Assembly: GCA_037447605.1 (NCBI GenBank)
Contig: CM074819.1
Location: 620,001 to 684,000, forward strand
DNA length: 64,000 bases
Direction of reading: 5' to 3'
Origin: Zygnema circumcarinatum SAG 698-1b
Taxonomy: Eukaryota > Plantae > Zygnematophyceae
The translations under genes were made by a program, and so were the position numbers. Of this stretch, positions 8,245 through 61,256 are shown one piece after another (positions within the stretch are counted from its first letter, which is position 1; each line of letters opens with the position of its first letter). The notes beneath the pieces were generated by a model. That model did no database searches and had not been told where the DNA came from. It saw only the letters and a list, made by a program, of their open reading frames with translations.

Positions 8245-13151
<4,907 letters not shown>

Positions 13152-18664: not shown

Positions 18665-21600
18665 AACTGAACTGGAACTGAAACTGAAACTGAAACTGGC
18701 GAAATGCTGCGTTCCATGCAGGCCATTTCAGCCTCTGTTGGTCCTGGAGGTATGGGGGGAGGTCCGGGAGGAATTTCAAGGAGTGGAACTCCTGCTCTTG
18801 GAGGAGCTCATAGAGCTCGAGATGCTCTATGGCAGAGATTGCATACATGTATGGATTCTTTGTATGGAATTCTGCTCGCTACATGGCATCTTCAGCGCGT
18901 TCTAGCAAAGAAAAGGGACCCCATCTCGCATGTGGTTTTTCTCGACGAAGTTGTGCAGGTAAGTAAGTTAGGGAAGAGATTAAGGAGGCTAAGAGTAAAG
19001 ATAGTTTCAAGAGAATGAGGAATTTGAAGATTCGGTAGTGGAGGAGGGAGGGGGTGGGAGAGAGAGAAAGAGGGTTCGAGGAGGAGAAGGGAGAGACGGT
19101 TAGGAGGTTAACCTGCCTTTCCTTTCTGATATTTAAACTTTTAGCATGCAGCTTTCATGCAGTTTCTAGGTCTTCTTATTTTACACTCGATGGGCTATGT
19201 TCTCTCTCTCTCTCTCTCGCTCTCTCTCCCTTTTTTCGTTTTGATCATGCAGGCTGGAGAGCAGATGCCCTGTGAAAAAGTATGGGAAACCTTGGTTCGA
19301 GTTTTTACAAGCCAACTCAAAGCAGCATTCACTGCCAGCAGTTTTGTGAAGGAGACTTTTGTGGGAGGATATCCAAAGCTTTTAGGAGAGGTAGAGGGCC
19401 TGTTAGAGAGGCTGGCGAGAGATACAGAGGTGAAGGGAGTTCAACCAGCAGCTAAACCTGAGGAGAGGGTTCAGCTCATTAAAACACTTGAACCATTTCA
19501 GGTGAGTTTGTGGGCCGTAAATTCTACTAATCAACTTCCTTAAAGAATTCACGAAATTGAACAAAGAATCCTCGAAGGCTTGAAAAGGAAAGTAAAAGTA
19601 GACTCAGCAGTTAATGTGATTAAGTAATGGTAGAAGCACACATTACATTGTGTAGGATAGGTTGCTAGGTTTTTGCCGTGTGGATGAGATATAGAGAGAG
19701 CTGAAGGGAGGAAGGCGGAGGGACGAGTGGGAGGGACAGGGAGAGGGAGGGTGGAGGGAGAGGGAGAAGGTGGAGCGAGGGGAAGAGGGGAACACGAGGG
19801 GAGGAGGGGTCGAGTGACGGAGAGGGAGGGGGAGGGGAACAGGGAGGGGAAGTGGAAGGGGAGAGAGAGGGGAGGGAGGGTGAGTCAGTATGAGACTCCC
19901 TTTAGTCTGCCAAAGCAGAAAACTCCTTGCCTCCTTCCTTCTCCGTCAACTAATTCTCACACTCAAACATTCCATGCGGAAATCTGAACTGACCTTCCAT
20001 AACATACCCCACCCTTACCCAGATTTCTGTTCAACAGTCCCTCAGTTTGGCGGGTTGGGGCGTTCCATGTGGTCCTGCAGTCGGCGTATCTCGGCCAATC
20101 ACTGACGCGCATGACGGATCTGGTCAATGGGCTGCTGCCACCTGGCAGCCGCGGAGCCATCCCTCCTGTAGAAACGGTTGGGAGAGTCGCCGCCCGCCTT
20201 CAGGATGAAGTGGAAGCTGTGAAGGGAGGGGCACAGCTCACATTGCTCGTGTTGAAGGGAGTGGGGAAAGCTTTGCAGCTGTTGGCAGAGAGAGCAGAGT
20301 ATCAGGTATCTTCACAAAGCATCTCTCTTATCTCTTACCTCTCTTATCTCTTATTATCTCTCATCTCTCACTTCACATCTCTCTCTTGCTTGCTCGCTTA
20401 CTCGACCTGCACCTTGCCCCTCCTTCCCTCCTTCCCTCCTCTCCTCTCTCTCCCTCTCTGTTGCGTGCTCGCTTCCTTTCCCGACCTGCACCTCGCCTCT
20501 CCTTCCCTCTCTCCCTGCCCCACCCCAGCCCACCCCGCCCTCCCCCCCCCCCCNNNNNNNNNNCCCCCCCCCCCCTCCTCCCTCGTTTGTTCTCTCCTTT
20601 CACCTGCCTCTCCCACTTCTTACCCTTCAAATCTAACTTCTAGCTTCTCCATTGAAGTGGCTGGTTGCCCTGACATACATGAGGTCTGCTGGAATAAAAA
20701 TATAGAGCCAAGGAAATTGATCAAATAGGAGTAAGAGAATGTGACGAAACTTGAGAAGAAGGTCGATCAAGAGTTCAAACGCTAAGAAAATGTGAAACGA
20801 TCTCTCTCTCTCTCTCTCTCTCCCTCTCTCTCCCTCTCTCTCCCCCTCTCTCTCTCTCACTCTCTCTCTCTCTCTCTCTCTGCCCTCTCTCTCAGGTGAA
20901 TATGAGCCCGGATGCGAGGCAAGTGGCAGGGCCCGCCACAGCAGCCCAACAGCGGAACAGCGCTCTCTGTGTGTTCCTGCAAGAGCTGCATGTTCGTATG
21001 CTCGCTATGCTGCTCTCTCGCCCACCAGAGGGAGAGGAGGCTCTCGCAAGTGGGCTCAAAGCCATTCATGGAGTTGCAGTAAATGCAATCACACCCCTTT
21101 TTACGGTATGTCATATGCTTAACCATTTCTGTTTCTTTTGTAGTTTCATGAGACAGTTTGGAAGAGGAGATTGGAAGAAGAAGCAGTGTGAAGGAGTGAA
21201 AGTGGGAGAGGAGGAGGTGGGAAGAGGCCGGTTGGAGTGAATGATCGGAATTGCCACAGTTCACTTCCCTTTGGGCTCTGCTCCGTACCCCTAGTATGAA
21301 GCAATATCACAGGGCAAGCAGTGAGAGAGAAAGTAGATCGTCTCTCTCTGCTCTCACCGTCTCTCTCCCCCCCTCTGTCTCTCTCCCTCTCCCCCCCCCC
21401 CCCCCNNNNNNNNNNCCCCCCCCCCCCTCCTCCCTCGTTTGTTCTCTCCTTTCACCTGCCTCTCCCACTTCTTACCCTTCAAATCTAACTTCTAGCTTCT
21501 CCATTGAAGTGGCTGGTTGCCCTGACATACATGAGGTCTGCTGGAATAAAAATATAGAGCCAAGGAAATTGATCAAATAGGAGTAAGAGAATGTGACGAA

Positions 21601-23907
21601 ACTTGAGAAGAAGGTCGATCAAGAGTTCAAACGCTAAGAAAATGTGAAACGATCTCTCTCTCTCTCTCTCTCTCCCTCTCTCTCCCTCTCTCTCCCCCTC
21701 TCTCTCTCTCACTCTCTCTCTCTCTCTGCCCTCTCTCTCAGGTGAATATGAGCCCGGATGCGAGGCAAGTGGCAGGGCCCGCCACAGCAGCCCAACAGCG
21801 GAACAGCGCTCTCTGTGTGTTCCTGCAAGAGCTGCATGTTCGTATGCTCGCTATGCTGCTCTCTCGCCCACCAGAGGGAGAGGAGGCTCTCGCAAGTGGG
21901 CTCAAAGCCATTCATGGAGTTGCAGTAAATGCAATCACACCCCTTTTTACGGTATGTCATATGCTTAACCATTTCTGTTTCTTTTGTAGTTTCATGAGAC
22001 AGTTTGGAAGAGGAGATTGGAAGAAGAAGCAGTGTGAAGGAGTGAAAGTGGGAGAGGAGGAGGTGGGAAGAGGCCGGTTGGAGTGAATGATCGGAATTGC
22101 CACAGTTCACTTCCCTTTGGGCTCTGCTCCGTACCCCTAGTATGAAGCAATATCACAGGGCAAGCAGTGAGAGAGAAAGTAGATCGTCTCTCTCTGCTCT
22201 CACCGTCTCTCTCCCCCCCTCTGTCTCTCTCCCTCTCCCCCCCCCCCCCCCTTCTTCATTTGGATTTCCTTGTTTGACAGGCCATGGTAGAACGAATAGA
22301 GTCGTGTCTCCTCCTAATGCATGACGAAAACTTTGGAAGTGAGGAGGCCGGTGAGATTGGAGGAACTTCTTCAAAATATTTGGAGGAGAGCATCCGTTCT
22401 ATGGCCCATTTCCGGGCAGAATTTATTTCAAAACTTTTGCCAACCAACCCCCAAACCGCACCTTCCGCAGCAGCAGCCATGGCTGCTGCGGGAGAGGAAC
22501 CCATTTCCACAGGCCTTACAAGAAGGTATTAAACTTAAGAACACCCTAAAAATTCAAACTTCTTCACCTTCCTGTGTATCTCGAAACCTCACGTCTCTAC
22601 ATTACATCTACCGCTCCCTCACTACATTGAATCGCTGAAATCGATGTCTCCCCATCCTTTGCCTTCACTCTCTTTCTCCCTTCACATGCCTCGATTCCCA
22701 TACGAGTTAATGCTAAATTGCTGTTATTCTACTTTCTCTCTCTTTCTCTCCTCTCCTGCATCTCCCTATTCTCTCCCAAAGGATGGCATCGAGAGTGCTC
22801 CTTTTCTTCGTACGACATGCGGCTCTTGTAAGGCCTCTCTCAGAGGCTGGAAAACTCCAAATGGCGAGAGATATGGGAGAACTTGAATTTGCAGTTGGTC
22901 AAAATTTGTTCCCTGTTGAGCAGCTTGGAGCTCCCTATAGAGCACTCAGAGCATTCCGGCCCCTTCTGTTTCTTGAAACGACCCAAATACCAAGCAGCTC
23001 TCTTTTGCAGGTGAGTTTGACGTTGCCTCATAATGTTGCTACGGAGGGAGAGGGGTCCTTGGCCTTGCAAGTGGAGTCGTGGGAGGGTGGGAGGGTGGGA
23101 GTGGAAGGAAGGAGAATGTTGGAGGGGGGAAGTAGAGACGTCAAGGGATGGAGAGTGGGAGAGGATGGTGGGTTTGCTGGTGTTTTTCTCTTCGAGAGGA
23201 GGGAGTGGAGAAGAGATGAAGGAGGAGAAAAATTAAGAGAGGAGAGAACTCGATAGATTTCCCTCTATTTTGAATGGATGAAAGATGCCAGGCAGGCTAA
23301 ACTTACTCTTTCCCCCCCACCCCCCTCTTTCTCGTTCCTCCCATTCTCTCCCTTCAATCCCCCTCCCTCTCTTCCCCTCGCTCGCCCCTCTTCCTTGCTC
23401 TCCTTCCCCTCACCCTCCTTTCTCTCCCTGTCTCTGCCCTTTCTCTACCCATCTCTGCCCCCGCCTCCCTCACCCTCCCTCTCTCGCCCCCCTCTCTTTC
23501 TCCTTCCTCTCTCTCTCTCTCCCGTCTCCCTTTTTCTCTCTCGTCCCCCCTATCTGTCCCACCCTCTCCCCCCTCTCCCTCTCCCCCCCCTCCCATTCTC
23601 CCCCTCCTTTCTGCTCTTCCAGGATATCCCTCCCAGTGCCGTCATCCACCACCTCTTCTCCCGTGCCCCTCCGGACTTAGAATCTCCTATGCAGCGCAAT
23701 CAGCTCACTCCCGCACGCTTCTCCCTTTGGCTTGACCGCCACTCGGAGGAGGACGCGTGGAAGGAGGTCAAGGGCAGTCTTGAGGCCTATGTGCAGAAAG
23801 TCAGGTCCCGAGGAGATAAGGAATTTTCGCCCATTTATCCGCTCATGCTGAAGTTAGGGCAGACACTATTGGAGAGTGCGTCGGGGAATGATCGAAAAGG
23901 GGGGTGA
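16406..23907 (+). CDS. COG5: Conserved oligomeric Golgi complex subunit 5
   Basis: Exons encode FLAEDFNATEFASQ, ALSSGSAVASAKKLSEGIALLERQLRSEV, DALWQRLHTCMD...WHLQRVLAKKRDP, FVGGYPKLL, YLGQSLTRMTDLVN, LQMARDMGELEFAVGQNLFPVEQLGAPYRALRAFRP and VRSRGDKEFSPIYPLML. One exon appears twice (20896-21105 and 21742-21951), probably by assembly duplication. Confidence 0.93.
18582..18698. repeat. Hexamer tandem repeat (GAAACT/GAAAGT)n in a COG5 intron
   Basis: Directly visible run of actgaa and agtgaa units ending just before the acceptor near 18722. Confidence 0.9.
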
Positions 23908-25145: not shown

Positions 25146-28100
25146 TCATCCAAAGGTAGCCCGAGCTGCCCTCCTTCCGTGCTTATCATATGCGACATTG
25201 AATTTATCGACGAGTTCATTAATCGCACTGCACCCGGGAAACAAGAGAAAGATTCATTAAGATTTTCTTCCCTCCCCCCCCTGACTCTCCTCCTCTACGT
25301 TTCTCTCGCTCTCAGTGACTGTACAATCCACTATTTTGGGTAGGGCTTGTTATGGAAGACCTGATGAGACTATGCAATACAGGCCTTTCAAAGGGTGCCA
25401 GCTTCACGCACACTCTCTTCCCTCTTTCACAATTCCTCTGTCCTTTAAACATTCCCTGTCCTCTGTCCGTCCTTTCTGTTGCTCTCCTTTTCTCTCTTTC
25501 CTACAGTAACATGTTCCACACCTCCATTTGTCCCTTTCTCTCTCTAACTCTCTCTCTCTCAGTGTTCCTCCCTCCGCTTCTCCTTCTCTTGCCTCATTTC
25601 CCTCCCTCAGTTTTCTTTGTTCCTCTCGTCCTTCCTTCTCCTTCGTGACAGGAAAGGAGGGGGAGGGAGGGACGGAGGGAGGGAGGGAGTGGGGGAAAGG
25701 TGGGGGGGAGAGAGGGGGAGAGAGAGTAGGAGGGGACGAGATGGCAAAGTACCTGGTGCCCTTCATGACGCTTGCCATGTAAGTCATGAGCAAAGTATCG
25801 TTGTACTCCTGAACCAAAAACAATAACAAAGCCATTTTCAACAGACCCCTCTCACTCCTGCAGGAATTCTTCTGCAACAGACCTCCCCTGACCGAAGAAA
25901 CTTAAACCAAAAGGAGATGCTCTACAGCCTCCTTCAAAGCTCAACTTGAGCAAATTAGTAGAGAGGTCCAGCACATCAATGATCGAAAATATTGCTAACA
26001 TGCAAGAAAGTCTTTCTGTTCAGATAAGGAAAATTGCAGTCAGGAACTGTAACTCACCATCAAAAACTCCTCTTGGAATTTTGGGGAATCGATTGCAGGA
26101 AGTCGTCGTACAAGACTTGAAACCTGCCGGAGAAGCGAATGTTCATATGGAAGCTCACCTGCAAGCAGAGTTGAGAAACATAAAGTGTACAGTGATGAAA
26201 ACATTAGGAAAAAACCATAAATAATTAGGGCGAGTGCAAACGGGCAACAAATACCAAGCAGGAACAGATCCGATTTTACAGTGTGTTGGTTTTGGTATAC
26301 GAAATCATGTACTACATGAAAAATTACAGAGCATGCAACAAAGCGCTTTACTGCTTTGCCTCCCATATTCAAAAAAGCGACTGAAAATGTAGATCAAGGT
26401 GGTAAGTCATCAAATCAGAATAAACCTTTTTGCATGTTGACGAGAAGGTTTCGTAGAACTTTAATTCTGCCACTGAGCATCTTAATGGCGTTGTGCATTC
26501 CCGTCAAGTGCGCAGCCACTGCACAAAACCGCTGACAATTTGTTAAGGGAAAGCAGAACAAGAAAAGCTGAGTAACAAAGTAAGAGAAACGAGAAATGTA
26601 GGTAAGAATTTCATTGTGTAAGAAGGCTCCAGAAAGTAATCTTTTCAAGGAATGGGAAAATTTTGAAGGCTATGTGCACATTGCCCGAAATCAATAAAAT
26701 GAATGTACGATAAAGTTCACATGACTCCTCGCATACAAATGCATCCAAACGCTTCACATATAGGAATGGTTTTCTTATCATGATGATGATGCATCTCGTC
26801 AATCGAACACAGCAAAAAAACAATTCTAGAAAGAGATGACAACAATAGAGAAGACATCGATTCTTATAACAAGAAAACTTCAACAAAGAAACGGCACCTA
26901 CGTTGAGTAGCTGCAGAACTCCCATCCGATGGCTTGATGTGCGCAACATGGTCTACTGATATGCGTTCAGCTTCCACGGTCTGGGCAGGCCCATTCAAAC
27001 ATAAAGTTCAGAAAGCCAAGAACAAATAATTTCTCACAGTCAAACAGCCAAAGTCGAAAACAAAAGGGGAGCCATACAGTCGTAAAAGATACTGAGCAGC
27101 GATCCGCTTAGAATTACTTTTTAAGTTCTCATCAGAAAAAACAAAAAAGAATCAGAATCGCTTGCCTGATCTCATTTCCGCACATCGTCAATATTTTGTT
27201 GTTTTCAATCGTTTCAAGCAAACCTGATGCTAGGTATCATTTCAGCAAAAGCAAGTACGTCTCACCTCAATAGTGTAACTGGAGCTCACAAAAATAAGGG
27301 AAGGGACTCCATCGATGACATGCAGTTCTGCGAAAAAGTTAACCACATTCACCGACAGCCCCTTCAAGAAGAGGACGAGCCAATAGTCAGCAAGGTCGAA
27401 GCCAACAGCAAGAAATACTAGTTGTGCCTCCTACACATGAACATTTGATCACATTTGCCAAGTTCGGAAAACGCCGAACAGGAGCAAAGCTACAAAACAG
27501 CACACAAGCTTTGCAGCTTCAGCAGTGACTTGCAAAATCGCCAATTCCTATCCAAATGTGCAGAGCTAGAAATGTAAGAACTAACTTTACGGATGTTGGG
27601 TCATATCTCTTGCAGAGGTTCCATTCCTTGACAGGATACAAAGCTGCCCGCGACAAGAATGTTCATGTTTCCCCAAAAAAATGTTGCAGATAATGCAATA
27701 AAGCTGCAGTCTGCGCTGGGAAGGGGATACTAGATAGTGCACAACTTGCAAACCCTAATTCCAAGCTATGTTGCAGAAAAAGCAAACACATAGAGGGAGG
27801 TTGTGTTTCAGCACTGTTTGGGACTGTTGGCATCTGCTTGCAGTATGGACGTAAGCTGGAAGAAATATTTGTATGGTTACAAGGGCTGAAAAAAGTGATT
27901 ACCGCTTTCATAAATCGTTATTGGGAGGTCCTTGCCGGCAGGATTAATGGCTGGATTGAGAAGGACATAGATAGGGCTTTCATTTATTTCCATCAGCTGC
28001 ACCCGTCAACATACATGATTTCACCATAAGAAATGGAAATGCTTACAAACCAGAAACTAAATAACAAGAAATTGTGTCATTTATCCACATTCAGCAAATA

Positions 28101-29006
28101 GGTGAGGTGAAATCATATGAGAATAAGCGGAATTCAACAGCAAGACTGAAGGAAAAGAAAAAAGTGGATAGATTGCGAGTTCAGAAACGAATTGAAACTG
28201 AACATGCGCTAAACATTTGACTTCATAGCAATCAGAAAGAGGGTCACTCACAGCCTTATGAATATGCATATCCGAGTCCTGTACATCGTTTCCAGTGGAA
28301 TACCAGCCGAGAATGTCGTATTTCGGAAAAACCTTCTTATCTGCAAACAGCAGAAAACCAAAAAAATCCGTTAGCCCCGACCTAGTGCGACGGCATCTGG
28401 CAGACAGTCGCCAACTGGCAAGAACAAAGCGCGAGAGCGAGAGATAGAGAGGGAGAGAGCAAAAGAGAAACAGATACAGAAAGAGAGAGAAAGTGAGCGA
28501 GAAACAGATAACAGGGAGAGAGGGAGAGCGAAAGAAACTGTATGCCTAATTTTTCCTTTCAGATTGCAACATCCGCAGAACAATCCGCCTTTTGGGATTA
28601 AGATGCATAAGCAGGAGACGGAAGAAATCAAGGAAGCAGAACACAGAATCAAAGAAGCAATACCTTGATCAACAATGCAAACAAGTAAGGAGGCATAAAT
28701 CTCACATTGTTCGATTTTGGTATCAAGAAATACTCTGTCGATGATAATTTCTCCTGCAGCATATGGCGCTGCAGATGTGCTTGCCTCCAGTTCCCCCCCC
28801 TCTGTACTCATAGCGTCCTTGAATCCATACTTCAGCTCAAAAGAATTGAAAACTTCCACCGTTCGCCCTGACTGAATGCCCAGCACGCATCCTAAAACGC
28901 GCTGCGCGGCGCCATTTCTCTGCGCTTTGATGCGAGTGTGGTGATCAGATATGTTCAAAATCACCAAGGGATGCAGCTTGAATGTCAGGCCGCTGGCTGA
29001 AGACAT
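25146..29006 (-). CDS. CSN6: COP9 signalosome subunit 6 (MPN- domain)
   Basis: Exons encode TFKLHPLVILNISDHHTR...VLGCVLGIQSGRTVEVFNSFEL, YKKVFPKYDILGWYSTG, LMEINESPIYVLLNP, ELHVIDGVPSLIFVSSSYTIE|TVEAERISVDHVA, HLTGMHNAIKML, EYNDTLLMTYMA and AINELVDKFNVAYDK. Stop at 25146. Confidence 0.95.
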
Positions 29007-47549: not shown

Positions 47550-48301
47550 TCAGAGAGAGGAATCCAGGCTCCTCGGTTTCCCGGTCTGCCTCTGGTTCAG
47601 TACTCCATGAAGACGGTGAATGAGTTTATCTCTCGTAAGGGGTTTGCTCACAAATTCATCAAATCCGCTTTGAGCACATTTTACCATATCGCCATCTGAA
47701 CAAAGAATAAAGGGGAAAAGGTTTAAGGGAGAAGAAAAAGATAACCAAGAAAATTGAAAAACTTCACACCAATACGAGACGATTTCTCAAAAATTTCAAT
47801 TCCTCAAATTGACGGGATTGGATAGGGCAAGCTTTCACAGTTTTTTCAGATTTACCATTTAGGGGAATTTTCGCGCCGCTACATGCAGAAACTGGACAGC
47901 CAAACGCTGAAATTTGGCATAACGGAACTGAACGGACTGAACGGATTTTGACATGGAACCCACCTGTCACATTTGAGGTGACCGCAAAAATAAGCATTCT
48001 CCTCCTTGTTGGAGTTTGGCAGGCCTCCCAATCACGGAACTGCTCCACCTGCTCAAACAGAACGGAGAAACTGAGACTGTCAGTTTAACAGGGAACCGCA
48101 AAAGTACTCTCCACTTCAAATTTACACAAACCTTCGATCCCTCTCCCTTTTGCTCACTCTCACGCCTCTCTCTCTCTCTCGTTCCTTCCACTCTCCTCCC
48201 TCTCCCTCTCCCTCTCCTCCCTCTCCCTCTCCCNNNNNNNNNNTCTCCTCCCTCCCTCTCTCTCTCCCCCTTCCCCCCTCCCTCTCCCCACTATCTCTCC
48301 C

Positions 48302-48332
<31 letters not shown>

Positions 48333-51300
48333 GTGTCGGCTCCCTTACCGCATTGAGCCCATCCAACACAGGCATAAGGAGGTCCATTAGCACCAAGTCG
48401 AACTGCGGAGGCAACTCCTCTCCCTCCAACATGCTCTCCCTCTGGTAGGGAGAGAGTTCCTCTCCCACGTTTCCTTGCATTACTTCCAGTGCCTCCTTTC
48501 CGTTACAGGTAACGGTCACTTGGCAGCCGAGACTCTCCAAAAGTCTCTGACCCATTGTACGGTTCACCACATCGTCCTCCACCAGAAGGACCTGCAAAGG
48601 AAAAGGACAAGAACAAAGGTACACAGCTCATAAAGGAAAGGACAAAGATGTTTTCAACTTGAAAGAAAACATTTTGATTTTGATTTTGATTTTGATTTTG
48701 GGGATCACCATAATTGAAATGGGCGATAAATTGTGGTTTCTAGAGGGACAGATAGAGAAAAGAGCTCGTGTAGGCTTCGTGAACACACGCGTGAAAGTAG
48801 AAAGAGAGAGAAAGAGAGGAAGAGAGGAAGAGAGAGCGAATGGGAAGTGGGAGAGGAAAGGGGAGAGAGAGAAGGGAGAGAGAGGGGGAAGGAGAGAGAG
48901 AGAGAATGAGAGAGAGAGGAGAGAGAGAGAGAAGGGGGGAGAGCGAGAGAGGGAAGGAGGGCAAGAGAGAGAATGAGAGAGAGAGAGAGGGAAGGAGAGA
49001 GAGAGAGAAGGGGGGAGTGCGAGAGAGGGAAGGAGAGGGATAGGTTCTAGGCTCCCTCCCTACCTTTTGGCCTCGAATTAGGTTTAAATCCTCCTGTGGC
49101 AGTCCGCCACCTGTCGATCCGGGATTGGCCCGCGGCTTGCCCACTCCTCCGGCCAATGGCGTGCTGCCAGCTGGCGGTCCTGGGCGCCGTCTGGAACCAC
49201 TAGGAGCGGGAGCAACAGGAATATTGTGAGCCACGTTCAGACTGTTTGAACTAATGTCCGTACTACCGCGAGGGGCTTTTCTCCATATAGTTTCAACCTC
49301 CTCACTGGAATCGAGACTGCTGAAATGAATGGCAGAAAAAAGAAAATATGGTCAGCAAAAGGTTAAAAAAAAAAAAAAAAAAAGGGAAAAAAATCAAAAA
49401 TAAGTGTGTTTGAAGGGTGGGTGCTTAGGAAATATGAAGGAAACTTCAGAAAGGAGTAAAATTTGAGTTTAGAGAGTATGTATAGGGGCTATGTATGTGA
49501 AGACTTACCTTTCCAGACTTGATTTTTCGGACTTGTTACCCTGCATTGCATGGAAAGGGGAGCACCGTTAAAGAAACGTTAGGGATGTAACTGGATACAT
49601 AGATCCCCCATAGAAATACCCTTCACATCAACAACCCACTTCCCCTGAATTCTTCCCTTTACAGCTTTCCTTTGAAGACATACCAAGGAAAACAAATAAA
49701 GGAAAGAAACTTACCCCTGCGATGGGTAGAATTGATCTCGACTCGTCTCTCTCTCCACTCCCTCTCCCTTCCTTAGCGTGGAATGAGGCAACACTCGTGT
49801 CCGATTCCTCTCCCTCTTCCGCTCCTCCTCTCCCTCCCCCCCTACTCTCTCTCCCCTTATTTACCTCAAAAGTGGGAGGGGAACCCTTAGACAACTTGCT
49901 CCCCATAGCCGCAGAATTTGTCCTCCCTTTATCAACTTGAAGCTTCAATTCCGAGTCGTATGAGAGAGAGAAGGAATTCACTCCTTGAGTAGTCCTCCTT
50001 AAGGGACTTTTTACTTCCTCATGATTCTCCCTTGGGAGAGAGTAAGTTCCCCTATGGAGAGAGTTTGACTGAGTGAGACTGGNNNNNNNNNNNNNNNNNN
50101 NNNNNNNNNNNNNNNNNNNNNNNNNNNNNNNNNNNNNNNNNNNNNNNNNNNNNNNNNNNNNNNNNNNNNNNNNNNNNNNNNNAGCTTAGAGAGTGTTATA
50201 GGGAAATCAATAAGACCAGAATCTCAATAGGAATTAGTACATTCCGGAATAGAAGTGAACGTAGAACCTCCATCTCACCCGCTGAACATCGGCAACATCA
50301 TCGGGATGGCAGCCCTCCCATGCAATAGAAGTAACCAAATCTGTTGGCTTCCATCCCAGAATCCGTTTGCTGCTCGGGGAAATGTAGCACAATGTCCACT
50401 GCAAAAACCCCACACCTGATTTCCAATGAATCTCTCCCCCTCTTATCTCTCTGTGTCTGTTCTCTCCCCCTCTCTCCTTCTTCCTCTCTCCCACCCAGTT
50501 CCTTCCCTCCCTCCCTCCCAAAAGGCCAACGTTCACTTTAAGCTATCCACATGATCAAAAGCTTCTGTATTAGAGAGTGATGTATACCTGCGCTCTCTCT
50601 GCGACATACACTATCCAAGGTGATGTAGCACTCAACATCAACATATCCGTGATGAGAGACAAATCGAGTCCTTCCACGGGAGGTAGTGTGGAATCTGTCG
50701 GCCACGTCTCTCCCCCCCCCGGAGTTCTGCAAACCCTTCCAATACCCAACAAGGCATCAGCTCATATAATTCCAACGATCTGAATAGAGTTGAACAAAAG
50801 CTCTTTTGCAAGGAATACGTAACGGCTTACATCGTTGATAAAAATTCTTCTAAATTGGTTCAGATGTTTCCTTACGTGTTGTTTTTTCCGAGGGCTGAAG
50901 TTGGTTGATGTGGTACAATTCTCCCATGGTTAGGAGCAAAGGGCCGAGGATACATGTTGCCTAGTTCCGTACTGAGAATGATAAGCTCCTCCAGACATCT
51001 GATCTCTCCATCAAGCAGTCTGCAAAAACCGTCCAACGGATTTCTGTCAGTGATCTTCAAGGGAACGCTATAGAACGGGACGGGCCGGAAAAAGAACAGG
51101 GACACAAGACCAAAGCATGCAGACAGGATCGCAAACAAGGAAAAAGAAGGAATTGGTTTCCAAGGTTGCCACTGCAGAGATAGGAGTAGAGAGAAGTTCA
51201 GATCGTAAAAGTAAAGGCGAAAGATTGTGCATAGGCCAAACAAGAATTCTGACTCTCTCTCTCTCTCCCTCCCATCTCTGCATTCTTCCTTCATCCCACT

Positions 51301-53707
51301 TCTGCCGACCCTTTGCAGCTCTCGTTAACCGCCACCCTCTCTTCCATTCCCAGACAATCCTTCCTGATAGGTCCGTCTTTTGTTGTTAGTTCCTTCGCTT
51401 CCTTCCTCCTCCCTCCACCCCTCAAGGTGCCTTTCCTTCAGCGCTCCCTTTCCTNNNNNNNNNNGGGAGGGGAGAGCGAGACAAAATGATAGAGGACAAC
51501 CGGACAACAGACAAGAGCGGAGGCAAAAATCGGCAGAATGGGAAACAAAAAGGAAGAAGGGGGAGGAGATAGAGATGAGGAGAAGCTAGGAGAGTGTTAT
51601 AGGGAAATCAATAAGACCAGAATCTCAATAGGAATTAGTACATTCCGGAATAGAAGTGAACGTAGAACCTCCATCTCACCCGCTGAACATCGGCAACATC
51701 ATCGGGATGGCAGCCCTCCCATGCAATAGAAGTAACCAAATCTGTTGGCTTCCATCCCAGAATCCGTTTGCTGCTCGGGGAAATGTAGCACAATGTCCAC
51801 TGCAAAAACCCCACACCTGATTTCCAATGAATCTCTCCCCCTCTTATCTCTCTGTGTCTGTTCTCTCCCCCTCTCTCCTTCTTCCTCTCTCCCACCCAGT
51901 TCCTTCCCTCCCTCCCTCCCAAAAGGCCAACGTTCACTTTAAGCTATCCACATGATCAAAAGCTTCTGTATTAGAGAGTGATGTATACCTGCGCTCTCTC
52001 TGCGACATACACTATCCAAGGTGATGTAGCACTCAACATCAACATATCCGTGATGAGAGACAAATCGAGTCCTTCCACGGGAGGTAGTGTGGAATCTGTC
52101 GGCCACGTCTCTCCCCCCCCCGGAGTTCTGCAAACCCTTCCAATACCCAACAAGGCATCAGCTCATATAATTCCAACGATCTGAATAGAGTTGAACAAAA
52201 GCTCTTTTGCAAGGAATACGTAACGGCTTACATCGTTGATAAAAATTCTTCTAAATTGGTTCAGATGTTTCCTTACGTGTTGTTTTTTCCGAGGGCTGAA
52301 GTTGGTTGATGTGGTACAATTCTCCCATGGTTAGGAGCAAAGGGCCGAGGATACATGTTGCCTAGTTCCGTACTGAGAATGATAAGCTCCTCCAGACATC
52401 TGATCTCTCCATCAAGCAGTCTGCAAAAACCGTCCAACGGATTTCTGTCAGTGATCTTCAAGGGAACGCTATAGAACGGGACGGGCCGGAAAAAGAACAG
52501 GGACACAAGACCAAAGCATGCAGACAGGATCGCAAACAAGGAAAAAGAAGGAATTGGTTTCCAAGGTTGCCACTGCAGAGATAGGAGTAGAGAGAAGTTC
52601 AGATCGTAAAAGTAAAGGCGAAAGATTGTGCATAGGCCAAACAAGAATTCTGACTCTCTCTCTCTCTCCCTCCCATCTCTGCATTCTTCCTTCATCCCAC
52701 TTCTGCCGACCCTTTGCAGCTCTCGTTAACCGCCACCCTCTCTTCCATTCCCAGACAATCCTTCCTGATAGGTCCGTCTTTTGTTGTTAGTTCCTTCGCT
52801 TCCTTCCTCCTCCCTCCACCCCTCAAGGTGCCTTTCCTTCAGCGCTCCCTTTCCTCTTCCCTCCTCTCTCCTCGCATTCCCCCCCTGCACCGTTTAGTCC
52901 TCTCATTCCAGCTCCCCCCATCTCTTCTCTCCTTCCCTCCCATCCTTTGCCCTTCAACCTTGTTCCTTTTCTCTCTTCTGCTCAAGCCGTAACCACCACA
53001 GTACTATTCCAGTTCCATCCGTCCCACTCCCTCCTCTGCGTTCTACCTCCGTCACCTTTCCTCCACCACTCCAAATTGTTTCGACATCTTCCCTACTTCC
53101 TCCCCCCCACCCCCCTGCCTGCTCCCCGCTCCCTCCTCCTCGACCTCCCCCTCCCCCTGCCTCCTCTCCCCTCCCCCTACCCCTCCCCCTCCCCCTGCCT
53201 CCTCCCCCCTCCTCCCTTCCCCCTCCCCCCTCCCTCTCCTCCTGCCTCCTCCCCCCTCCCTCCCTCTTCCACCCCCCCCCTGCCTCCTCCCCGCTCCCTC
53301 CTCCCTCCCTCCTCNNNNNNNNNNCCCCCCCCCTGCCTCCTCCCCGCTCCCTCCTCCCTCCCTCCTCCCTCCCCCTGCCTCCCTCTTCACCCTCCCCCTC
53401 CCACTTCCTCCCTTCCGCTCCCTCGTCTGCCCTCCCCCTCTCACCCGGCCGTGCGCGCGTCCTCCTCCGTCTCCACGGTGAGCTCCATCCGCCGGCTGTC
53501 GAGCTCGTGGTACCACTTGCGGTACATGCGCAGCCGTTCCGTTTCCGGCGACGGAGGCGAGCCCAGGCCCCCCGCCACGGCGAGCAGCTGCTTCCCGCCG
53601 CCTCCTGAACCCTGCTGCTGCGCCTTCCCCGGCGCCCCTGAACCCTGCGCGGCGGGCAACATGTCCTCCGGCGATGGCGCGTAATGCACAATGCCGGGAG
53701 CGCGCAT
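47550..53707 (-). CDS. Two-component signalling gene: N-terminal PAS domain and C-terminal receiver (REC) domain; a kinase core is not visible and may lie in the 100-N gap
   Basis: REC reads VLLVEDDVVNR...FDLVLMDLLMPVLDG...IFAVTSNVT|DGDMVKCAQSGFDEFVSKPLT, with stop at 47550. The PAS exon WTLCYISPSSKRILGWKPTDLVTSIAWEGCHPDD is at 50279-50398 and duplicated at 51680-51799. The first exon near 53446-53707 splices in phase 2 to LLDGEIRCLEEL. Ser/Gly-rich linker exons lie at 49050-50082. Confidence 0.75.
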
Positions 53708-55578: not shown

Positions 55579-56125
55579 CTAAGCATCGCCCTTCTGCTGC
55601 TTCATATTTTTGCTCCCCGGCCGCCCCGACTGCAGGGTCCTCGAAAGCTTCACCAGCGACATGGCCTGCTCCTCCATGATCTGCTGCAGCTGACCGATCC
55701 GCTCCCCTCTGCACTCCTCCTGCTCCTTCTCTATGTCGTCAATGATCACCTTCAAGTCGTAATACTTCTTCCTCCTCCACTCCTCCACGCCTTATACCGC
55801 CTTACTCCGAATTCGGCTGCTCCATCACATGGATCGGCGGGAACACCCCCGTGAACCCTACTACCCACGCCTCCCATACATGCTCCGGAGTCTTAAGCAA
55901 TGGATAAAGCTTATCAAATATAGCTTCTGGAAGCCCCTTAATGCTTTCTATCACGAGAGGAGTGAGGAGGGAGGTGGCCTGGGAGGAGCACTCTCCCACG
56001 ACTGGCGGCCCTACCGCCATTGGCTCTGCCCCCCCTAGGGCTCGGCTACCCTCTCTCTCTATCACTCTCTGAGGGGAGGTCCTTAAAGGGCCAGTGCCGG
56101 CGAGGACTGTCTGAGTGAGGGTTTT
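55579..56125 (-). pseudogene. Frame-disrupted GCR1_C-like DNA-binding domain (C-terminus of a CryptonF-type protein)
   Basis: Reads LKTPEHVWEAWVVGFTGVFPPIHVMEQ, then a stop at about 55802, then in another frame WRRKKYYDLKVIIDDIE...SLVKLSRTL. This matches the recalled GCR1_C pattern W.EW..G....PP...LE...WR....Y..RK.II..I. It is out of frame with the upstream exon at the A6 run (56122-56127). Confidence 0.7.
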
Positions 56126-59100
56126 TTAGACATTGCCTCATGAGAGCATTGTCGGCAGTCAGGCGTCGCACGTCCTCCCGCAGAGATCGGAGCTCCTCCA
56201 GCACCTGTGGGAGGGGGGGTTTAGGGTTTAGGGTTGGGGTGGAGGTAGGGTTGGGGTGGAGGTAGGGTTGGGGTGGAGGTAGGGTTGGGGTGGAGGTAGG
56301 GTTGGGGTGGAGTTAGGGTTGGGGTGGAGTTAGGGTTCAGGTGGAGTTAGGGTTCAGGTGGAGGTAGGATTGGGGTGGAGTTAGGGTTGGGGTGGAGTTA
56401 GGGGAGTTAGGGTTCAGGTGGAGTTTCAGGTGGAGTTAGGGTTCAGGTGGAGTTAGGGTTCAGGTGGAGTTAGGGTTCAGGTGGAGGTAGGGTTCAGGTG
56501 GAGTTAGGGTTCAGGTGGAGTTAGGGTTCAGGTGGAGTTAGGGTTCAGGTGGAGTTAGGGTTCAGGTGGAGTTAGGGTTCAGGTGGAGGTAGGATTGGGG
56601 TGGAGTTAGGGTTGGGGTGGAAGTAGGGTTCAGGTGGAGTTAGGGTTCAGGTGGAGTTAGGGTTCAGGTGGAGTTAGGGTTCAGGTGGAGTTAGGGTTCA
56701 GGTGGAGTTAGGGTTCAGGTGGAGTTAGGGTTCAGGTGGAGTTAGGGTTCAGGTGGAGTTAGGGTTCGGGTGGAAGTAGGGTTTAGGTGGAATAAGAGTT
56801 CAGGTTTAAGGGTTGTCGGGGGTTCGGATGTTATTAGGGTTCCGGTTTCTGGAATCGACCAAGTCCAGTTGACATTTTAAAACGAAGCTGAAGATCAGAT
56901 CAAACCGACAAAAAAGCTCAAGACCACTCCCAACATCAATCGCAAAACGACGATCAACTTCAACATAACATCAAAACAAACCCCCCTCCCCCTCCCCTCC
57001 CTCCTCCCTCCCTCCCTCCTCCCTCCCTCTCCCTCTCCCATTCTCTCCCTCTCCCTCCCTCCCCTCCCCCTCCCCTCCCCTCCCCTCCCTCCCCCTCCCT
57101 CCCCCTCCCTCCCCCTCCCCCCCCTCCCTCCCCCTCCCCTCCCTCCCCTCCCTCCCCTGTCGTGCGCCTCCCTGACCCCTGCCGCGAATCCCTCCCACGC
57201 GGGCGCCCTGAAGAGCGTGTGCGCGAAGAGCGGCAGCGCGGGCGCGTCCCTCTGCAGGAGCGCGGCGTCCTGGAGGAGAACCACGCGGAGCCACCGCAGG
57301 GCGAGGAGGAACCCCTCCGCGGCGACGTCCCGCCACGCGGCGGGGCAGCTAAGGTTGCGCTGGGGGAGGGGAGAGGGGGGAGGGAGAGGGGGAGGGAGAG
57401 GGGGAGGGAGGGGGGGAGAGGGGGAGGGAGAGGGAGGGAGAGGAGGGAGGGAGAGAGGGAGGGAGAGGGGAGGGAGAGGGGGAGGGAGAGGGGGGAGGGA
57501 AGAAGGAGAGGGAGAGGGAGAGAGGGAGGGAGGAGGGAGGAGGGAGGGAGAGAGGAGGGAGGGAGAAGGAGAGGGAGAGGGAGAGGGAGAGGGAGAGAGG
57601 GAGGGAGAGAGGGGGAGAGAGGGAGGGAGAGAGGGAGGGAGGGAGAAGGAGAGGGAGAGGGAGAGAGGGAGGGAGAGGAGGGAGAGGAGGGAGAGAGGAG
57701 GGGAGAGAGAGATGCGGGGGAGAGAGGGAGAGGTAGAGGGAGGGAGCGAGGGAGAAAGTGGGAGGAGAGAAAGGGGGAGAAATAGAAGGGGAGGGAGGGC
57801 GGCGGAGAGAGAGGGAAAAAAAAAAGACGCCTTGGGCGTTTCGTAGGAATTTATTTCTGCATCTTCCTCTCTCTCTCTCTGTCTAGCCCCCATCTGTCTC
57901 GCTCTCTTAATTTTCTCCCAGACTCCTTCTCTCCTTCCCCTCCCTCTCTCCCTCTTCCCTCTCCCCCCCACTCTCCCCCCTTACCTCTCTGCGTCCCTCC
58001 CCCCCCCCCTCCCCCTCCCTCCCTCTCCCTCTCCATCCCCCTCCCCGTCCCTCCCCCTCCCCCTTCCCCTCTCCCTCTCCCATTCTCTCCCTCTCCCTCT
58101 CTCTCCCTCTCCCTCTCCCTCCCCCTCCCCCTCCCCCTCCCCCTCCCCCTCTCCCTCTCCCTCTCCCATTCTCTCCCTCTCTCTCTCTCTCTCTCTCCCT
58201 CTCTGTGTGCGAAAGCGTCACTCACCCTGCACACCCCCTCGTACGCCTCCTCCAGCCATGGCCACACCATCTTTTGAAGAGCCGGCGGAGGAATTGCGCG
58301 GGTTCGCGGCACCACGTAGGTGCTCCCATTGCCTTCAGACCCCGCTGACGTCAGCAGGTGCTCCATGGGAACCGGGTCGAACCGAGACAACAGAAAGTGC
58401 TCATACGTCCAACGGTCTCCGCTTTGCATATTCGCGCTCACCATCCTGATAATTTCGGGAAAAAGGAGAGAAAATAAGTAGTATTAAAGTAAGTATAGGT
58501 AAAGTGAGGGGTGACTATGAATATGCATACTCTCCCTCGCTCTCTCTCTCTCGCTCACTCTCTCTCTTTCCCTCCCGGCTCCTCCCCCCCGCCCTCTCTC
58601 TCATTTCCTTCCCTCTTCGATTTCGGAGTGCCTGAGAAGAGAGGGGACCAGAATAGAATGTCTCTCCCACTCTCTCTCCCTCTCCCTCTCCCTCAGCAAA
58701 CCCAAAACCTAACTTACCCTCGAGTTTGCGTACTTTGGTTAGTCGCTGTATTGTCTGCTTGCCGGCCTTTGAAGGTCTTTTTCTTATAGAAAAGTCCCAA
58801 ATGCCGGTAAGCAGCTCGGAGATAGTTGTACTGAGTTGCATAGACCATGTTCGCATTTTCTCGCCTCCCTTCTACTAAGGGATCTCCGTACCAATTTTCT
58901 CGAAAGGAGAAGTCTGGAAGTCTCTTTTTCCACCATTCCCACCTTCCAAACAACATCAAAGCAATGGCCCCCACCGGACATTCCAAATACTCTCTTGATC
59001 GCATCACTCCCACATATTCCGCTCTCCCGTTCTGTTGTGGACCCACCCAAACAGAATAACCTTGAAAGTGTTAAAAAGGGACTGTTGAATAGTATGGGAT

Positions 59101-60216
59101 GGGAGGTGGAGCTGGGAGGAGAGGGGTGGGAGGGGGAAGGAGGGGGCCGGGATGGGGGGGAGAGAGGGAGGGAGGGAGGGAGGGAGGGAGGGAGGGAGGG
59201 AGGGAGGGAGGGAGAGGAAGGTGGGGAGGGAGGGGTGGGGAGGGCGAGCAGCAAAGAGGGAAGTAGGGGAGGGAGAGAGGGAGAGAGTGGGAAAGCGGGG
59301 GGGATGGGAGAGAGTGGGGAGAAAGAGCAGCAAAGAGGGATAAAGGAGAACGGGAGAGAGAGACGAAAGGGAGAAGAGGAAGCGAAGAAAGGACAGAAAA
59401 TGAAGCCAAGCGATGTTCAAAAGAGAGAGTGATGCATTTTCAATTTCTTCATGGAATGAGGCAGAAAAGATTTTACCTTTTTAGGCCTCCCATTTCGCAA
59501 TATTAGCCCTAATACCTTCCCTTTGTCGGGTCCCACGTGATGAAGATCGTATTCAAAAATGTCGGCAAGGTGAGCATGTCGAGCATCTTCCGCCCTCCCT
59601 CTCGCCTTTCGCTCAAACAAAAAAGTCGCACTTTTGTAACAAAAAACATGCAGCAAGTAAAGGAGACAGATTACAATATCAGGACATAGAACCATCACAC
59701 TTTTCTCGGGCTACTTTTGCAACACGAATATGAATTCAAAAACTTAAATTTAAGGTTTTTTCGATTCGCATGATCAACTGGCATCACGTTTGGATCAAAC
59801 TTTTTGTATGAGGAATATGTGGGAGAGGAGATAGTACCGGACTTGAAGGCCAACATAAGGAGTGAAACCCATAAGAGAAGAAATTTCTTTTGCAGCCCCT
59901 TGCAACAGATATTTTGAAAGGTCGATAACTTGAGCGGGAGTGATCTCACTTGTCGCTTTTGCCTCCCCTTCCGAAAGCATTCTGTAGCCAAGAAAATACA
60001 AAACCACCACGGAAAGTAGCAGTTGGGAAGTCGTCATTCAACTTGAATATGATTAAATCTGACCTCCAGTTATGTTTAAAATTAACTTTATCGATTTGTT
60101 TTGCGCGAAGAATGGAGCTGGAGGGAGATGGAAGGGACGGAGGAGAGTAGGAGGGAGGGATATAAGGAGGGGAAGTGGGAGGTGGGAGGAATGGGAGAAG
60201 GGGAGAAGAGAGAACG

Positions 60217-60248
<32 letters not shown>

Positions 60249-61256
60249 AGAGAGAGAGAAATGTAGTGGTTCACTCACTCGTATTTCCGTTTAGAAATTA
60301 CTTTCTTGCTGGCCACAAGTATTTTGCCGATTAGAGGGTCGTTCCGTAAACTGTTGTACGGAACTTGCTTCTCATAGCACTGCTGCTTGTGGAAGTCCAC
60401 CAAACCTTTCAAGTATTGGTTCAATGTGGCGAATCCTAAGGGCAAAGCCCCTCCCAAAAAAAGGGCCACGCCTTCGGGGGTCACTTCTGCGTTGGAAATA
60501 CCTCTCTGAATCCAAAATTCCTGCAGGTTTCATGTTGCAATTAACTTTAAATGTTAGGAAAATTGGTACTCATTAGGTTAAAGGGTTTCTAATAGCCACC
60601 TGGAGAAGGTAAGTGTCAAAATTCAAGTTGAGATAGTGAAAGAGTGTGGGTGAGAGAGGGGGGAGAGAGAGTGTGGGGACGAGTGTGAAATCGAGTGAGA
60701 GGAGAAAAGGGGAGAATGTGAGAGGTGGAAAGGGAGGGTGAGAGAAAACGAGAGGAGAGAGAGAGAGAGGGGGGGTGGGAGAGGGAGAGTGCGAGAGAGA
60801 GCGGGAGAGAGAGCGTGAGAGAGAGCTGACCAAGTAGAGGCGAACGGAGCGATTGTACGACTTCCGAGTGGTTTCCTGCTGGTGGTTTGTGCAGAAGGCG
60901 TGGATTCTCTCCACAGTATCAGCCTCAAGCGGGGGCGGAACATGGTCTGAAAGTCGCCTCAAAAGCTCTGCGATATCCGCCTCCTCCGTATACTCGCTCT
61001 GCCCCACATCCTCCATAGGGGGGTCAAGGCCCCCTCCCCCGCCCTCTCCCACTCCTACCTCTACTCCCCCGACTCCTACTCCTTCCACTTCCACTCCTAC
61101 TCCTATTCCTACTTCTCCGACTTCGCCTCCAGCTCCGACACTGACTACTCCAAACGCTCCCACTCCCACTCCCACACTTTCGTGTGGGACAACTGGAAGG
61201 GAGTGAAGGAGGGAGGTTCCGGCGACTCCAAGGAGCCTCTCCACTATGGCTGCCAT
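56046..61256 (-). CDS. Intron-containing CryptonF-derived tyrosine-recombinase-fold (Ndc10 domain II-like) protein, about 613 aa, 8 exons
   Basis: Exons 60831-61256, 60279-60520, 59838-59981, 59477-59630, 58718-59031, 58226-58445, 57177-57359 and 56046-56204. All 7 GT-AG introns are phase-compatible; the last donor is the least certain. Motifs include ETTRKSYN, RAEDAR..HLADIF, NGRAEYVGVMRSREYLECPVGAIAL, PDFSFRENWY, YATQY, PPPALQKMVWPW and DVAAEGFLLALRWLRVVLLQDAA. Confidence 0.85.
56220..56790. repeat. Telomere-motif-containing 17-bp minisatellite (GGTGGAGTTAGGGTTCA / GGTGGAGGTAGGGTTGG), about 33 copies
   Basis: Begins with TTTAGGG TTTAGGG at about 56220. The units carry TTAGGG or GTAGGG and lie within the last intron of the Crypton-derived gene. 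Confidence 0.93.

What the first reader, a model, noticed from the sequence alone, without database searches (positions are those of the whole stretch)
56046..61256. Spliced Crypton-derived tyrosine-recombinase-fold gene that appears catalytically dead: candidate domesticated Ndc10-like protein in a plant-lineage genome
Seen in sequence: eight exons joined by seven phase-compatible GT-AG introns give an uninterrupted ORF of about 613 aa resembling CryptonF/Ndc10 domain II. The first catalytic Arg is kept (RAEDAR, exon 4). The H-x-x-R motif reads F-K-G-R (58762-58773). After G-x-R-W (58409-58414), the position 9 residues on, where the nucleophile Tyr sits in the recalled consensus (RW-x8-YL-x-x-LP), reads R-F-D-P-V-P (Arg at 58382-58384). 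Established: CryptonF elements encode YR plus GCR1_C and were described from fungi and oomycetes, and yeast Ndc10, Gcr1, Msn1 and Hot1 are domesticated derivatives. Inference: intact splicing together with loss of both catalytic residues fits a domesticated non-catalytic DNA-binding protein better than a random fossil. I know of no characterised example in streptophytes.
Basis: partly seen in the sequence, partly recalled or inferred. Interest (0 to 1): 0.85.

Follow-up and report, generated by a model that had tools for sequence, protein, structure and literature searches.

The report
Dead Crypton-derived recombinase-fold gene, tail broken
This is a spliced gene descended from a Crypton "jumping gene" whose DNA-cutting residues were lost long ago yet whose protein has been kept by selection, so it looks like a transposon gene taken over by an algal host; in this assembly its DNA-binding tail is broken by three small insertions or deletions.

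Summary
Eight minus-strand exons joined by seven GT-AG introns give a 613-aa ORF. It matches Pfam NDC10_II collinearly, and the motif coordinates given are exact.

Against 56 relatives, the conserved His is Phe and the nucleophile Tyr is missing.

New evidence: spliced transcripts from four public RNA runs (SRR8128902, SRR8128906-08) encode a 749-aa homologue, P0151.
- It is 70% identical overall and 74% over the core.
- It is collinear across six of the seven junctions.
- It lacks the same His and Tyr.
- Fourfold sites are near saturation (33% identical, 25% expected) while dN is 0.17, so omega is about 0.1.

This favours an old, selected, non-catalytic Crypton derivative.

The ORF is not the whole gene. 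The homologue continues into a GCR1_C-like tail. The exon 7/8 junction is not supported.

No expression, copy-number or synteny data exist for this organism. The scan had already noted Crypton-type copies elsewhere in this genome.

The parts
60831..61256 (-). Exon 1. N-terminal region with an in-frame Gly/Val-rich low-complexity insert. The conserved part is SEY...RKSYNRSVRLYL. The start may be upstream, at ATG 61307 or 61264.
   Evidence: model; tblastn of P0151 residues 3-103 aligns to 61271-60831 with a 46-residue insert in the window.
60279..60520 (-). Exon 2, the N-terminal SAM-like / core-binding region.
   Evidence: 73% aa identity to P0151 104-184. The blastn match stops at the splice sites; weak Phage_int_SAM_1 hit in P0151 90-148.
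59838..59981 (-). Exon 3.
59477..59630 (-). Exon 4. It holds catalytic Arg I (R283, codon 59596-59594), which is kept. It also holds the beta-hairpin Lys position (residue 319, codon 59488-59486), which is Arg here and Lys in P0151.
58718..59031 (-). Exon 5, the best-conserved block. The family's T-H-x-x-R motif reads T-F-K-G-R (58773-58762): His lost, Arg II kept.
   Evidence: NDC10_II 2.6e-12.; 83% identity to P0151.
58226..58445 (-). Exon 6. R-W lies at 58414-58409 (Trp kept). The nucleophile position W+9 is Arg (58384-58382), followed by Phe. A Tyr at W+2 is conserved in both homologues.
57153..57359 (-). Exon 7, the C-terminal helices of the recombinase fold.
   Evidence: NDC10_II 1.5e-6. 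P0151 458-527 aligns to 57362-57153.
56121..56210 (-). First part of the last exon, a coiled-coil-like linker (VLEELRSLREDVRRL...), in the frame of the upstream exons.
   Evidence: 80% identity to P0151 542-571, frame -3.
56122..56127 (-). Indel 1: one extra base relative to the homologous transcript, in or next to an A6 run.
55808..56119 (-). Tail segment 2, including the first half of the GCR1_C-like domain (..VWEAWVVGF..PPIHVMEQP). It is out of frame with the upstream exons.
   Evidence: 62% identity to P0151 572-675, frame -1; codon-position identities 0.71/0.83/0.42.
55777..55807 (-). Indels 2 and 3, in the middle of the GCR1_C-like domain. One is an 8-nt insertion (about 55807-55800) that carries a TAA and looks like a local duplication. 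The other is a 1-nt deletion (about 55781-55777).
55579..55791 (-). Tail segment 3, the second half of the GCR1_C-like domain (RRKKYYDLKVIIDDIEKE...[10 protein letters not shown]), with the natural stop TAG at 55581-55579. It lies in a third frame.
   Evidence: 70% identity to P0151 676-745, frame -2; the X-joined window tail scores 24.4 bits against a family-tail HMM.
56228..56805 (.). A 17-nt satellite (34 copies, telomere-like TTAGGG core) plus flanking GGR/CCCT low complexity. It occupies the interval between exon 7 and the last exon.

Best explanation
The locus belongs to an old gene lineage derived from a CryptonF-type transposon gene, with a tyrosine-recombinase fold plus a GCR1_C-like tail. 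This lineage lost the catalytic His and the Tyr nucleophile before the window copy and its only known homologue diverged. Since then it has been kept by purifying selection, so it is an exapted, non-catalytic protein.

Inferred mechanism. The recombinase fold still clamps DNA. Arg I, Arg II and Trp, which hold the scissile phosphate in active enzymes, are kept, but the protein cannot cut. In the full-length form the GCR1_C-like tail would add a second DNA-binding module. The protein would then act as a DNA- or chromatin-binding factor. One attractive role is a non-cutting competitor or repressor at sites of the Crypton elements resident in this genome.

In this assembly the tail is out of frame. 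This copy therefore either makes a tail-less protein of about 600 aa or has recently begun to decay.

Shown: fold, motif losses, shared derived changes, selection pattern, indels. Inferred: DNA binding, host function, time of loss.
For: Fold and family:
- NDC10_II hits on exons 5-7, and 2.1e-33 on P0151.
- The family profile hits yeast Ndc10 structures at 5.3e-21, over both the recombinase-like part and the C-terminal part.
- The AlphaFold model of P0151:60-545 has mean pLDDT 80.7. Its best PDB matches are Ndc10 (1e-9), then Cre, Flp and XerH.

Dead centre:
- In 56 relatives, His is 49/55 and Tyr 53/54.
- The window has F, and R (or F in the gapped alignment). P0151 has L, and K (or F).
- Arg I, Arg II and Trp are kept in both.

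Shared ancestry of the loss:
- 56 of 67 family-conserved columns have the same state in both proteins.
- The shared departures include G284A, GKTN to G(R/K)PK, G437D and R458L.

Selection:
- aa identity is 74% over 464 core codons.
- Codon positions 1/2/3 are about 0.8/0.87/0.45 identical.
- Fourfold sites are 0.33 identical against 0.25 expected at random (dS about 1.7). dN is 0.17.

Real spliced gene in the other organism:
- The same transcript appears in four RNA runs. Three of them retain 88 nt exactly at the exon 6/7 junction.

Not a typical multi-copy family:
- There is one copy in the window and no flanking terminal repeats.
- Close relatives form one cluster of two sequences in the protein collections.

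Tail:
- It is homologous to GCR1_C-type tails.
- It shows the same codon-position pattern as the core.
Against: - The window copy is not intact. Three frame-breaking indels lie in 620 nt of tail, one of them an 8-nt insertion carrying a stop. The exon 7/8 junction is unsupported and the interval is filled by a satellite.
- There is no transcript, read or orthologue evidence for this organism. Searches of 60-192 aa and 412-1310 aa proteins found nothing from it.
- Only two sequences define the lineage. Whether they are orthologues or old paralogues is unknown, and synteny is untestable here.
- Transposon genes also evolve under purifying selection, so omega below 1 alone does not prove host function.
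- Earlier scan notes (unchecked here) report several Crypton-type copies elsewhere in this genome.
Confidence: 0.55

Rival explanations
1. An ordinary dead copy of a Crypton transposon. The similarity to P0151 reflects a transposon family that was under selection for transposition until recently. Both copies then lost catalytic residues independently while decaying.
For: - The architecture is that of CryptonF elements, a recombinase plus a GCR1_C-like tail.
- The tail carries three frame-breaking indels, and a satellite sits between exon 7 and the last exon.
- Earlier scan notes list several broken Crypton copies in this genome.
Against: - The same two catalytic positions are replaced in both, by similar residues (F/L and R/K), along with many other shared departures in the catalytic motifs.
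- Exons 1-7 have no stop or frameshift over about 1.7 kb despite dS of about 1.7.
- P0151 is an unbroken 749-aa ORF expressed and spliced in four samples.
- There is no second copy in the window and no family of variants in the protein collections.
Confidence: 0.2
2. The indels are assembly errors, so the locus is in fact intact and encodes the full protein of about 750 aa with its GCR1_C-like tail.
For: - All three indels lie in simple sequence: an A6 run and a GGAGG/AAGGCG repeat context.
- The tail keeps the codon-position pattern of a selected coding sequence in the homologue's frame.
- Earlier follow-up notes on other Crypton copies of this genome report breaks in the assembly that RNA data did not show (not checked here).
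Against: - An 8-nt insertion carrying a stop is not a typical homopolymer error.
- The CSN6 gene in the same window shows no frame break within any matched exon.
- Three indels cluster in 350 nt, while 1.7 kb upstream has none.
Confidence: 0.2
3. The protein is still an active recombinase that uses other residues, for example the Tyr at W+2 (R-W-T-Y), which is conserved in both homologues.
For: The W+2 Tyr is conserved in both proteins. Arg I, Arg II and Trp are kept.
Against: - The nucleophile sits at W+9 in 53 of 54 relatives, and the same spacing holds in Cre (W315/Y324, from established knowledge).
- The His is also lost, and the surrounding motifs G-R-W-N and G-K-T-N are altered.
- The model is disordered in exactly this region.
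Confidence: 0.05

Closest known systems
CryptonF elements (Crypton DNA transposons of fungi and oomycetes; Kojima and Jurka 2011, PMC3212892)
   Same: - One protein with an N-terminal SAM-like region, a tyrosine-recombinase domain matching Pfam NDC10_II, and a GCR1_C-type tail.
- The nearest named relatives are fungal, from Tilletia and Thermomyces.
   Different: - His and Tyr of the catalytic set are missing.
- The gene has seven introns.
- There are no terminal direct repeats and no second copy in the window.
- The host is a plant-lineage alga, which is not among the hosts listed in that paper.
Ndc10/Cbf2 and Gcr1 of budding yeasts (CryptonF-derived host genes; structures 4ACO, 3SQI, 6GYP)
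   Same: - Recombinase fold kept, catalytic site not preserved, and a GCR1_C-like C-terminal region.
- Best structural match of the model and best PDB sequence match of the family profile.
   Different: - Only 13-15% identity in the structural alignments.
- This would be an independent loss in a different kingdom.
- There is no evidence of a kinetochore role or of CBF3 partners.
- Arg I, Arg II and Trp are still present here.
DUF3504 genes of animals (KCTD1, ZMYM2-4, QRICH1, WOC; CryptonA-derived, PMC3212892)
   Same: Domesticated Crypton recombinase domains that lost the catalytic Tyr and mostly the His, and are conserved under selection.
   Different: They derive from a different Crypton group, have no GCR1_C tail and have different fusion partners.

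Membership tests
CryptonF-type active tyrosine recombinase | Recombinase fold matching NDC10_II / phage-integrase-like catalytic domain | tested here: met
CryptonF-type active tyrosine recombinase | Complete catalytic set: Arg I, Lys, His-x-x-Arg II, Trp/His, Tyr | tested here: not met
   His is replaced by Phe. Tyr is replaced by Arg in the ungapped alignment or Phe in the gapped one. Lys is replaced by Arg. Arg I, Arg II and Trp are kept.
CryptonF-type active tyrosine recombinase | C-terminal GCR1_C DNA-binding domain in frame | tested here: not met
   A homologous tail is present (24.4 bits with X at the breaks). It lies in two other frames because of three indels. In P0151 the tail is in frame, but it scores only 17 bits against a Pfam cut-off of 23.
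CryptonF-type active tyrosine recombinase | Multiple copies with short terminal direct repeats | tested here: inconclusive
   There is one copy in the 64-kb window, and only low-complexity repeats flank it. The whole genome could not be searched.
Ndc10/Cbf2 (CBF3 kinetochore subunit) | Orthology with Saccharomycetaceae Ndc10, CBF3 partners and point centromeres | not testable with these tools
   Only fold-level and profile-level similarity was found.
Domesticated transposon-derived host gene | Purifying selection after loss of the transposition function | tested here: met
   dN is 0.17. Fourfold sites are 0.33 identical against 0.25 expected at random. The loss of His and Tyr is shared.
Domesticated transposon-derived host gene | Orthologues at syntenic positions in several species; single copy | not testable with these tools
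   The only homologue is a transcript of unknown organism. Two metagenome scans found nothing.
Domesticated transposon-derived host gene | Expressed, correctly spliced, unbroken ORF | tested here: inconclusive
   Met for the homologue P0151. For the window locus there are no transcripts on record, and the tail is out of frame.

The most novel reading that the evidence does not exclude
An ancient exaptation of a CryptonF recombinase in the plant lineage, independent of yeast Ndc10/Gcr1 and of the animal DUF3504 genes. It would be a conserved, non-cutting recombinase-fold DNA-binding protein of streptophyte-type algae. It might act on chromatin or centromeric DNA, or as a repressor of the resident Crypton elements.
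Probability: 0.45. Interest if true: 0.65.

Novelty: new member of a known kind. Interest (0 to 1): 0.5.

Why it matters
Crypton recombinases have been turned into host DNA-binding proteins at least twice: in yeasts (Ndc10, Gcr1 and relatives) and in animals (the DUF3504 genes). A third, independent case in a plant-lineage alga would show that this fold is repeatedly reused once its cutting residues are lost. It would also provide a testable candidate for a chromatin factor or a transposon repressor in a group where Cryptons themselves are barely described. The limit is that only two sequences define the lineage, and the copy in this window has a damaged tail.

Tried and rejected
- Word-indexed protein search with the exon 5 ORF (candidates of 60-192 aa) gave no hit.
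- The same search with P0151 (candidates of 412-1310 aa) found only its own cluster and one 27%-identical relative. Nothing from the window's organism is therefore on record.
- Two metagenome scans, with P0151 and with a window/P0151 alignment, found no relative.
- A single-sequence search of P0151 against PDB found nothing significant. A family profile was needed.
- YN00 and NG86 dS estimates failed or gave -1 because synonymous sites are saturated. I used fourfold-site identity instead.
- I tried to learn which organism SRR81289xx is. No paper cites these runs.
- As a same-species test I searched the window's CSN6 first exon. The best hit was only 62% identical and came from other runs. The RNA runs are therefore probably from another organism, but this is not proven.
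- The scan-notes look-up by sequence gave nothing.
- I searched for terminal repeats around the gene and found only low-complexity families.
- I rejected the idea that small introns could rescue the tail, because the shifts are 1-8 nt.
- I rejected filing the gene as Ndc10, because there is no orthology evidence.
Full report
**Observation**

On the minus strand, eight exons join through seven GT...AG introns into a 1842-nt ORF of 613 codons. The exons are:

| Exon | Coordinates |
|---|---|
| 1 | 61256-60831 |
| 2 | 60520-60279 |
| 3 | 59981-59838 |
| 4 | 59630-59477 |
| 5 | 59031-58718 |
| 6 | 58445-58226 |
| 7 | 57359-57177 |
| 8 | 56204-56046 |

Scanned exon by exon, Pfam NDC10_II is hit collinearly:
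- Exon 5: E 2.6e-12, profile positions 84-186.
- Exon 6: E 0.022, positions 227-262.
- Exon 7: E 1.5e-6, positions 273-314.

F-K-G-R is at 58773-58762, R-W at 58414-58409, and the Arg nine residues after the Trp at 58384-58382. Only one copy lies in the window.

**A close homologue**

An exhaustive HMMER search with exon 5 found one close relative (E 3.5e-52, 85% identity) and about 180 distant ones at 25-45% identity. The close one, P0001, shares a cluster with P0151, a 749-aa protein.

Both are encoded on 2.7-3.1 kb contigs assembled from four public RNA runs: SRR8128902, SRR8128906, SRR8128907 and SRR8128908. The four contigs are identical over 2816 nt. The exception is that three of them retain an extra 88 nt exactly at the codon boundary matching the window's exon 6/7 junction. 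As assembled, that segment does not have canonical GT-AG ends.

P0151 is collinear with the joined window exons:
- It runs without a break across junctions 1/2, 2/3, 3/4, 4/5 and 6/7.
- It is compatible with junction 5/6, which lies in a variable stretch.
- The nucleotide matches stop within 1-3 nt of the proposed splice sites.

**Catalytic residues**

I aligned the window protein, P0151 and 56 longer relatives.

| Position | Family | Window | P0151 |
|---|---|---|---|
| Arg I | R in 47/48 | R | R |
| Hairpin Lys | K in 52/54 | R | K |
| His of T-H-x-x-R | H in 49/55 | F | L |
| Arg II | R in 56/56 | R | R |
| Trp | W in 52/54 | W | W |
| Tyr nucleophile | Y in 53/54 | R at W+9, F at W+10 | K at W+9, F at W+10 |

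The ungapped alignment keeps the W-to-P spacing of 14 and places the Tyr position at W+9. MAFFT's gapped version places the following Phe there. Neither gives a Tyr. A Tyr at W+2 (R-W-T-Y) is conserved in both proteins, but it lies seven residues from the family's nucleophile position.

Of 67 columns conserved in at least 70% of the family, the two proteins share the same state in 56. Their common departures cluster in the catalytic motifs: G-K-T-N, G-R-W-N, and the Gly after Arg I. Core residues of the fold are kept. The remodelling of the active site is therefore most simply a single event before the two diverged.

**Fold**

- P0151 hits NDC10_II at 2.1e-33.
- A profile of the family hits yeast Ndc10 structures (4ACO, 6GYP and others) at 5.3e-21, over both the recombinase-like part and the C-terminal part.
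- An AlphaFold model of P0151:60-545 has mean pLDDT 80.7. Confidence falls below 50 exactly between the H-x-x-R position and the Tyr position.
- Foldseek ranks Ndc10 first (1e-9), followed by Cre, Flp and XerH.

**Selection**

Over 464 aligned core codons, aa identity is 74% and nucleotide identity 70%. Third positions are only 45% identical, and dN is 0.17. At 189 fourfold-degenerate sites identity is 0.33, against 0.25 expected from composition. That corresponds to a Jukes-Cantor distance of about 1.7. Omega is thus about 0.1 over a very long divergence.

Transposon genes can also show this pattern. Here, however, the selection has acted on a protein that lacks its nucleophile, which favours a host-level or at least non-catalytic function.

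P0151 continues for 180 residues beyond the point where the window ORF stops. It runs into a tail that matches Pfam GCR1_C weakly (E 0.0076, 17 bits against a cut-off of 23). The tail matches a profile built from the tails of 37 family members clearly, at 28.6 bits.

The window contains the whole tail, but in three frames:
- P0151 542-571 aligns to 56210-56121 (frame -3).
- P0151 572-675 aligns to 56119-55808 (frame -1).
- P0151 676-745 aligns to 55791-55591 (frame -2).

Nucleotide alignment places three indels:
- One extra base at the A6 run 56127-56122.
- An 8-nt insertion at about 55807-55800. It carries a TAA and looks like a local duplication.
- A 1-nt deletion at about 55781-55777.

In each shifted frame the codon-position identities are 0.70-0.81, 0.81-0.97 and 0.37-0.42, the same as in the core exons. 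The tail was therefore under the same selection for nearly all of the divergence time. The breaks are either recent or assembly errors.

By contrast, exons 1-7 (about 1.7 kb) have no frame break. At the tail's indel density about eight would be expected. This is a rough inference, because the indels sit in simple sequence. It hints that the upstream part may still be constrained.

The exon 7/8 junction is also uncertain. Then 16 residues of P0151 have no counterpart. The interval holds (GGR)n low complexity and a 578-bp 17-mer satellite.

**Context**

The window also carries an ordinary intron-rich CSN6 gene. Its best named relatives are streptophytes (Mesotaenium, Riccia, Sphagnum), but its best hit overall is only 62% identical over the first exon and comes from other runs. 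Two things follow. The window's organism is not represented in the protein collections. The SRR81289xx runs are probably from a different, distant organism, since a same-species CSN6 would have appeared. That last point is an inference.

The named distant relatives of the recombinase are fungal, as expected for the CryptonF group. In Kojima and Jurka 2011 (PMC3212892):
- CryptonF elements carry YR plus GCR1_C domains and occur in fungi and oomycetes.
- The yeast genes Cbf2/Ndc10, Gcr1, Msn1 and Hot1 are derivatives that lack the catalytic site.
- The animal DUF3504 genes are domesticated Cryptons.

My literature searches found no paper describing Cryptons in streptophyte algae.

Earlier notes of this scan report several Crypton-type gene copies elsewhere in this genome, mostly broken, and one other 'catalytically dead' candidate. 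I could not examine those sequences.

**Verdict**

The gene lineage is best read as a domesticated, catalytically dead CryptonF derivative, parallel to Ndc10/Gcr1 but independent of them. This particular copy has its GCR1_C-like tail out of frame and an unverified last junction.

Whether it makes a tail-less protein, is a young pseudogene, or is mis-assembled cannot be decided without reads from this organism. The proposed function, DNA binding without cutting and possibly repression of resident Cryptons, is inferred from the retained phosphate-binding residues and from the precedent of Ndc10. It has not been shown.

Noticed in passing
window 56228-56805: A 17-nt satellite (TTAGGGTTCAGGTGGAG, about 34 copies, 90% matches) with a telomere-like TTAGGG core. 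It ends in CCCTAAA repeats next to the last exon's acceptor site and lies inside the presumed last intron.
   Followed up: partly
L002:1688-1775 (also in L003 and L004): Three of the four homologous transcripts retain an 88-nt segment exactly at the exon 6/7 codon boundary, which truncates the product to 494 aa. As assembled its ends are TC..AG or GT..CA, not GT..AG. This may be an allele with a damaged donor site, or a non-canonical intron.
   Followed up: partly
window 25155-29006 (minus strand): An intron-rich COP9 signalosome subunit 6 gene, matched in nine pieces. It is only about 50-65% identical to any protein on record, so the organism has no close relative in the protein collections.
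   Followed up: partly
window 3344-3937 (+): A 197-aa ORF with a monothiol glutaredoxin motif (CGFS), probably one large exon of a PICOT/GRXS17-like gene.
   Followed up: no
window 50872-51294 and 52273-52695; also 20857-21264 and 21709-22110: Two pairs of identical or nearly identical 133-140-aa ORFs, about 1.4 kb and 0.85 kb apart. They are local tandem duplications, or duplicated assembly.
   Followed up: no
window 9763-11422: A GA/CT dinucleotide-type microsatellite of about 1.6 kb, open in several frames (poly-RE, poly-SL). CT/GA-rich low complexity also fills most introns of the gene studied.
   Followed up: no
window 48160-48624 (minus strand): An ORF with a response-regulator receiver-like sequence (VLLVEDD...DLVLMDLLMPVLDG). 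It is possibly an exon of a hybrid histidine kinase or a response regulator.
   Followed up: no
window 57177-57359 and 58226-58445: Exons 6 and 7 have GC3 of 0.73 and 0.93, against 0.36-0.56 in exons 2-5 and 0.51-0.56 in the homologue. This is a strong local GC shift next to G-rich low complexity.
   Followed up: partly
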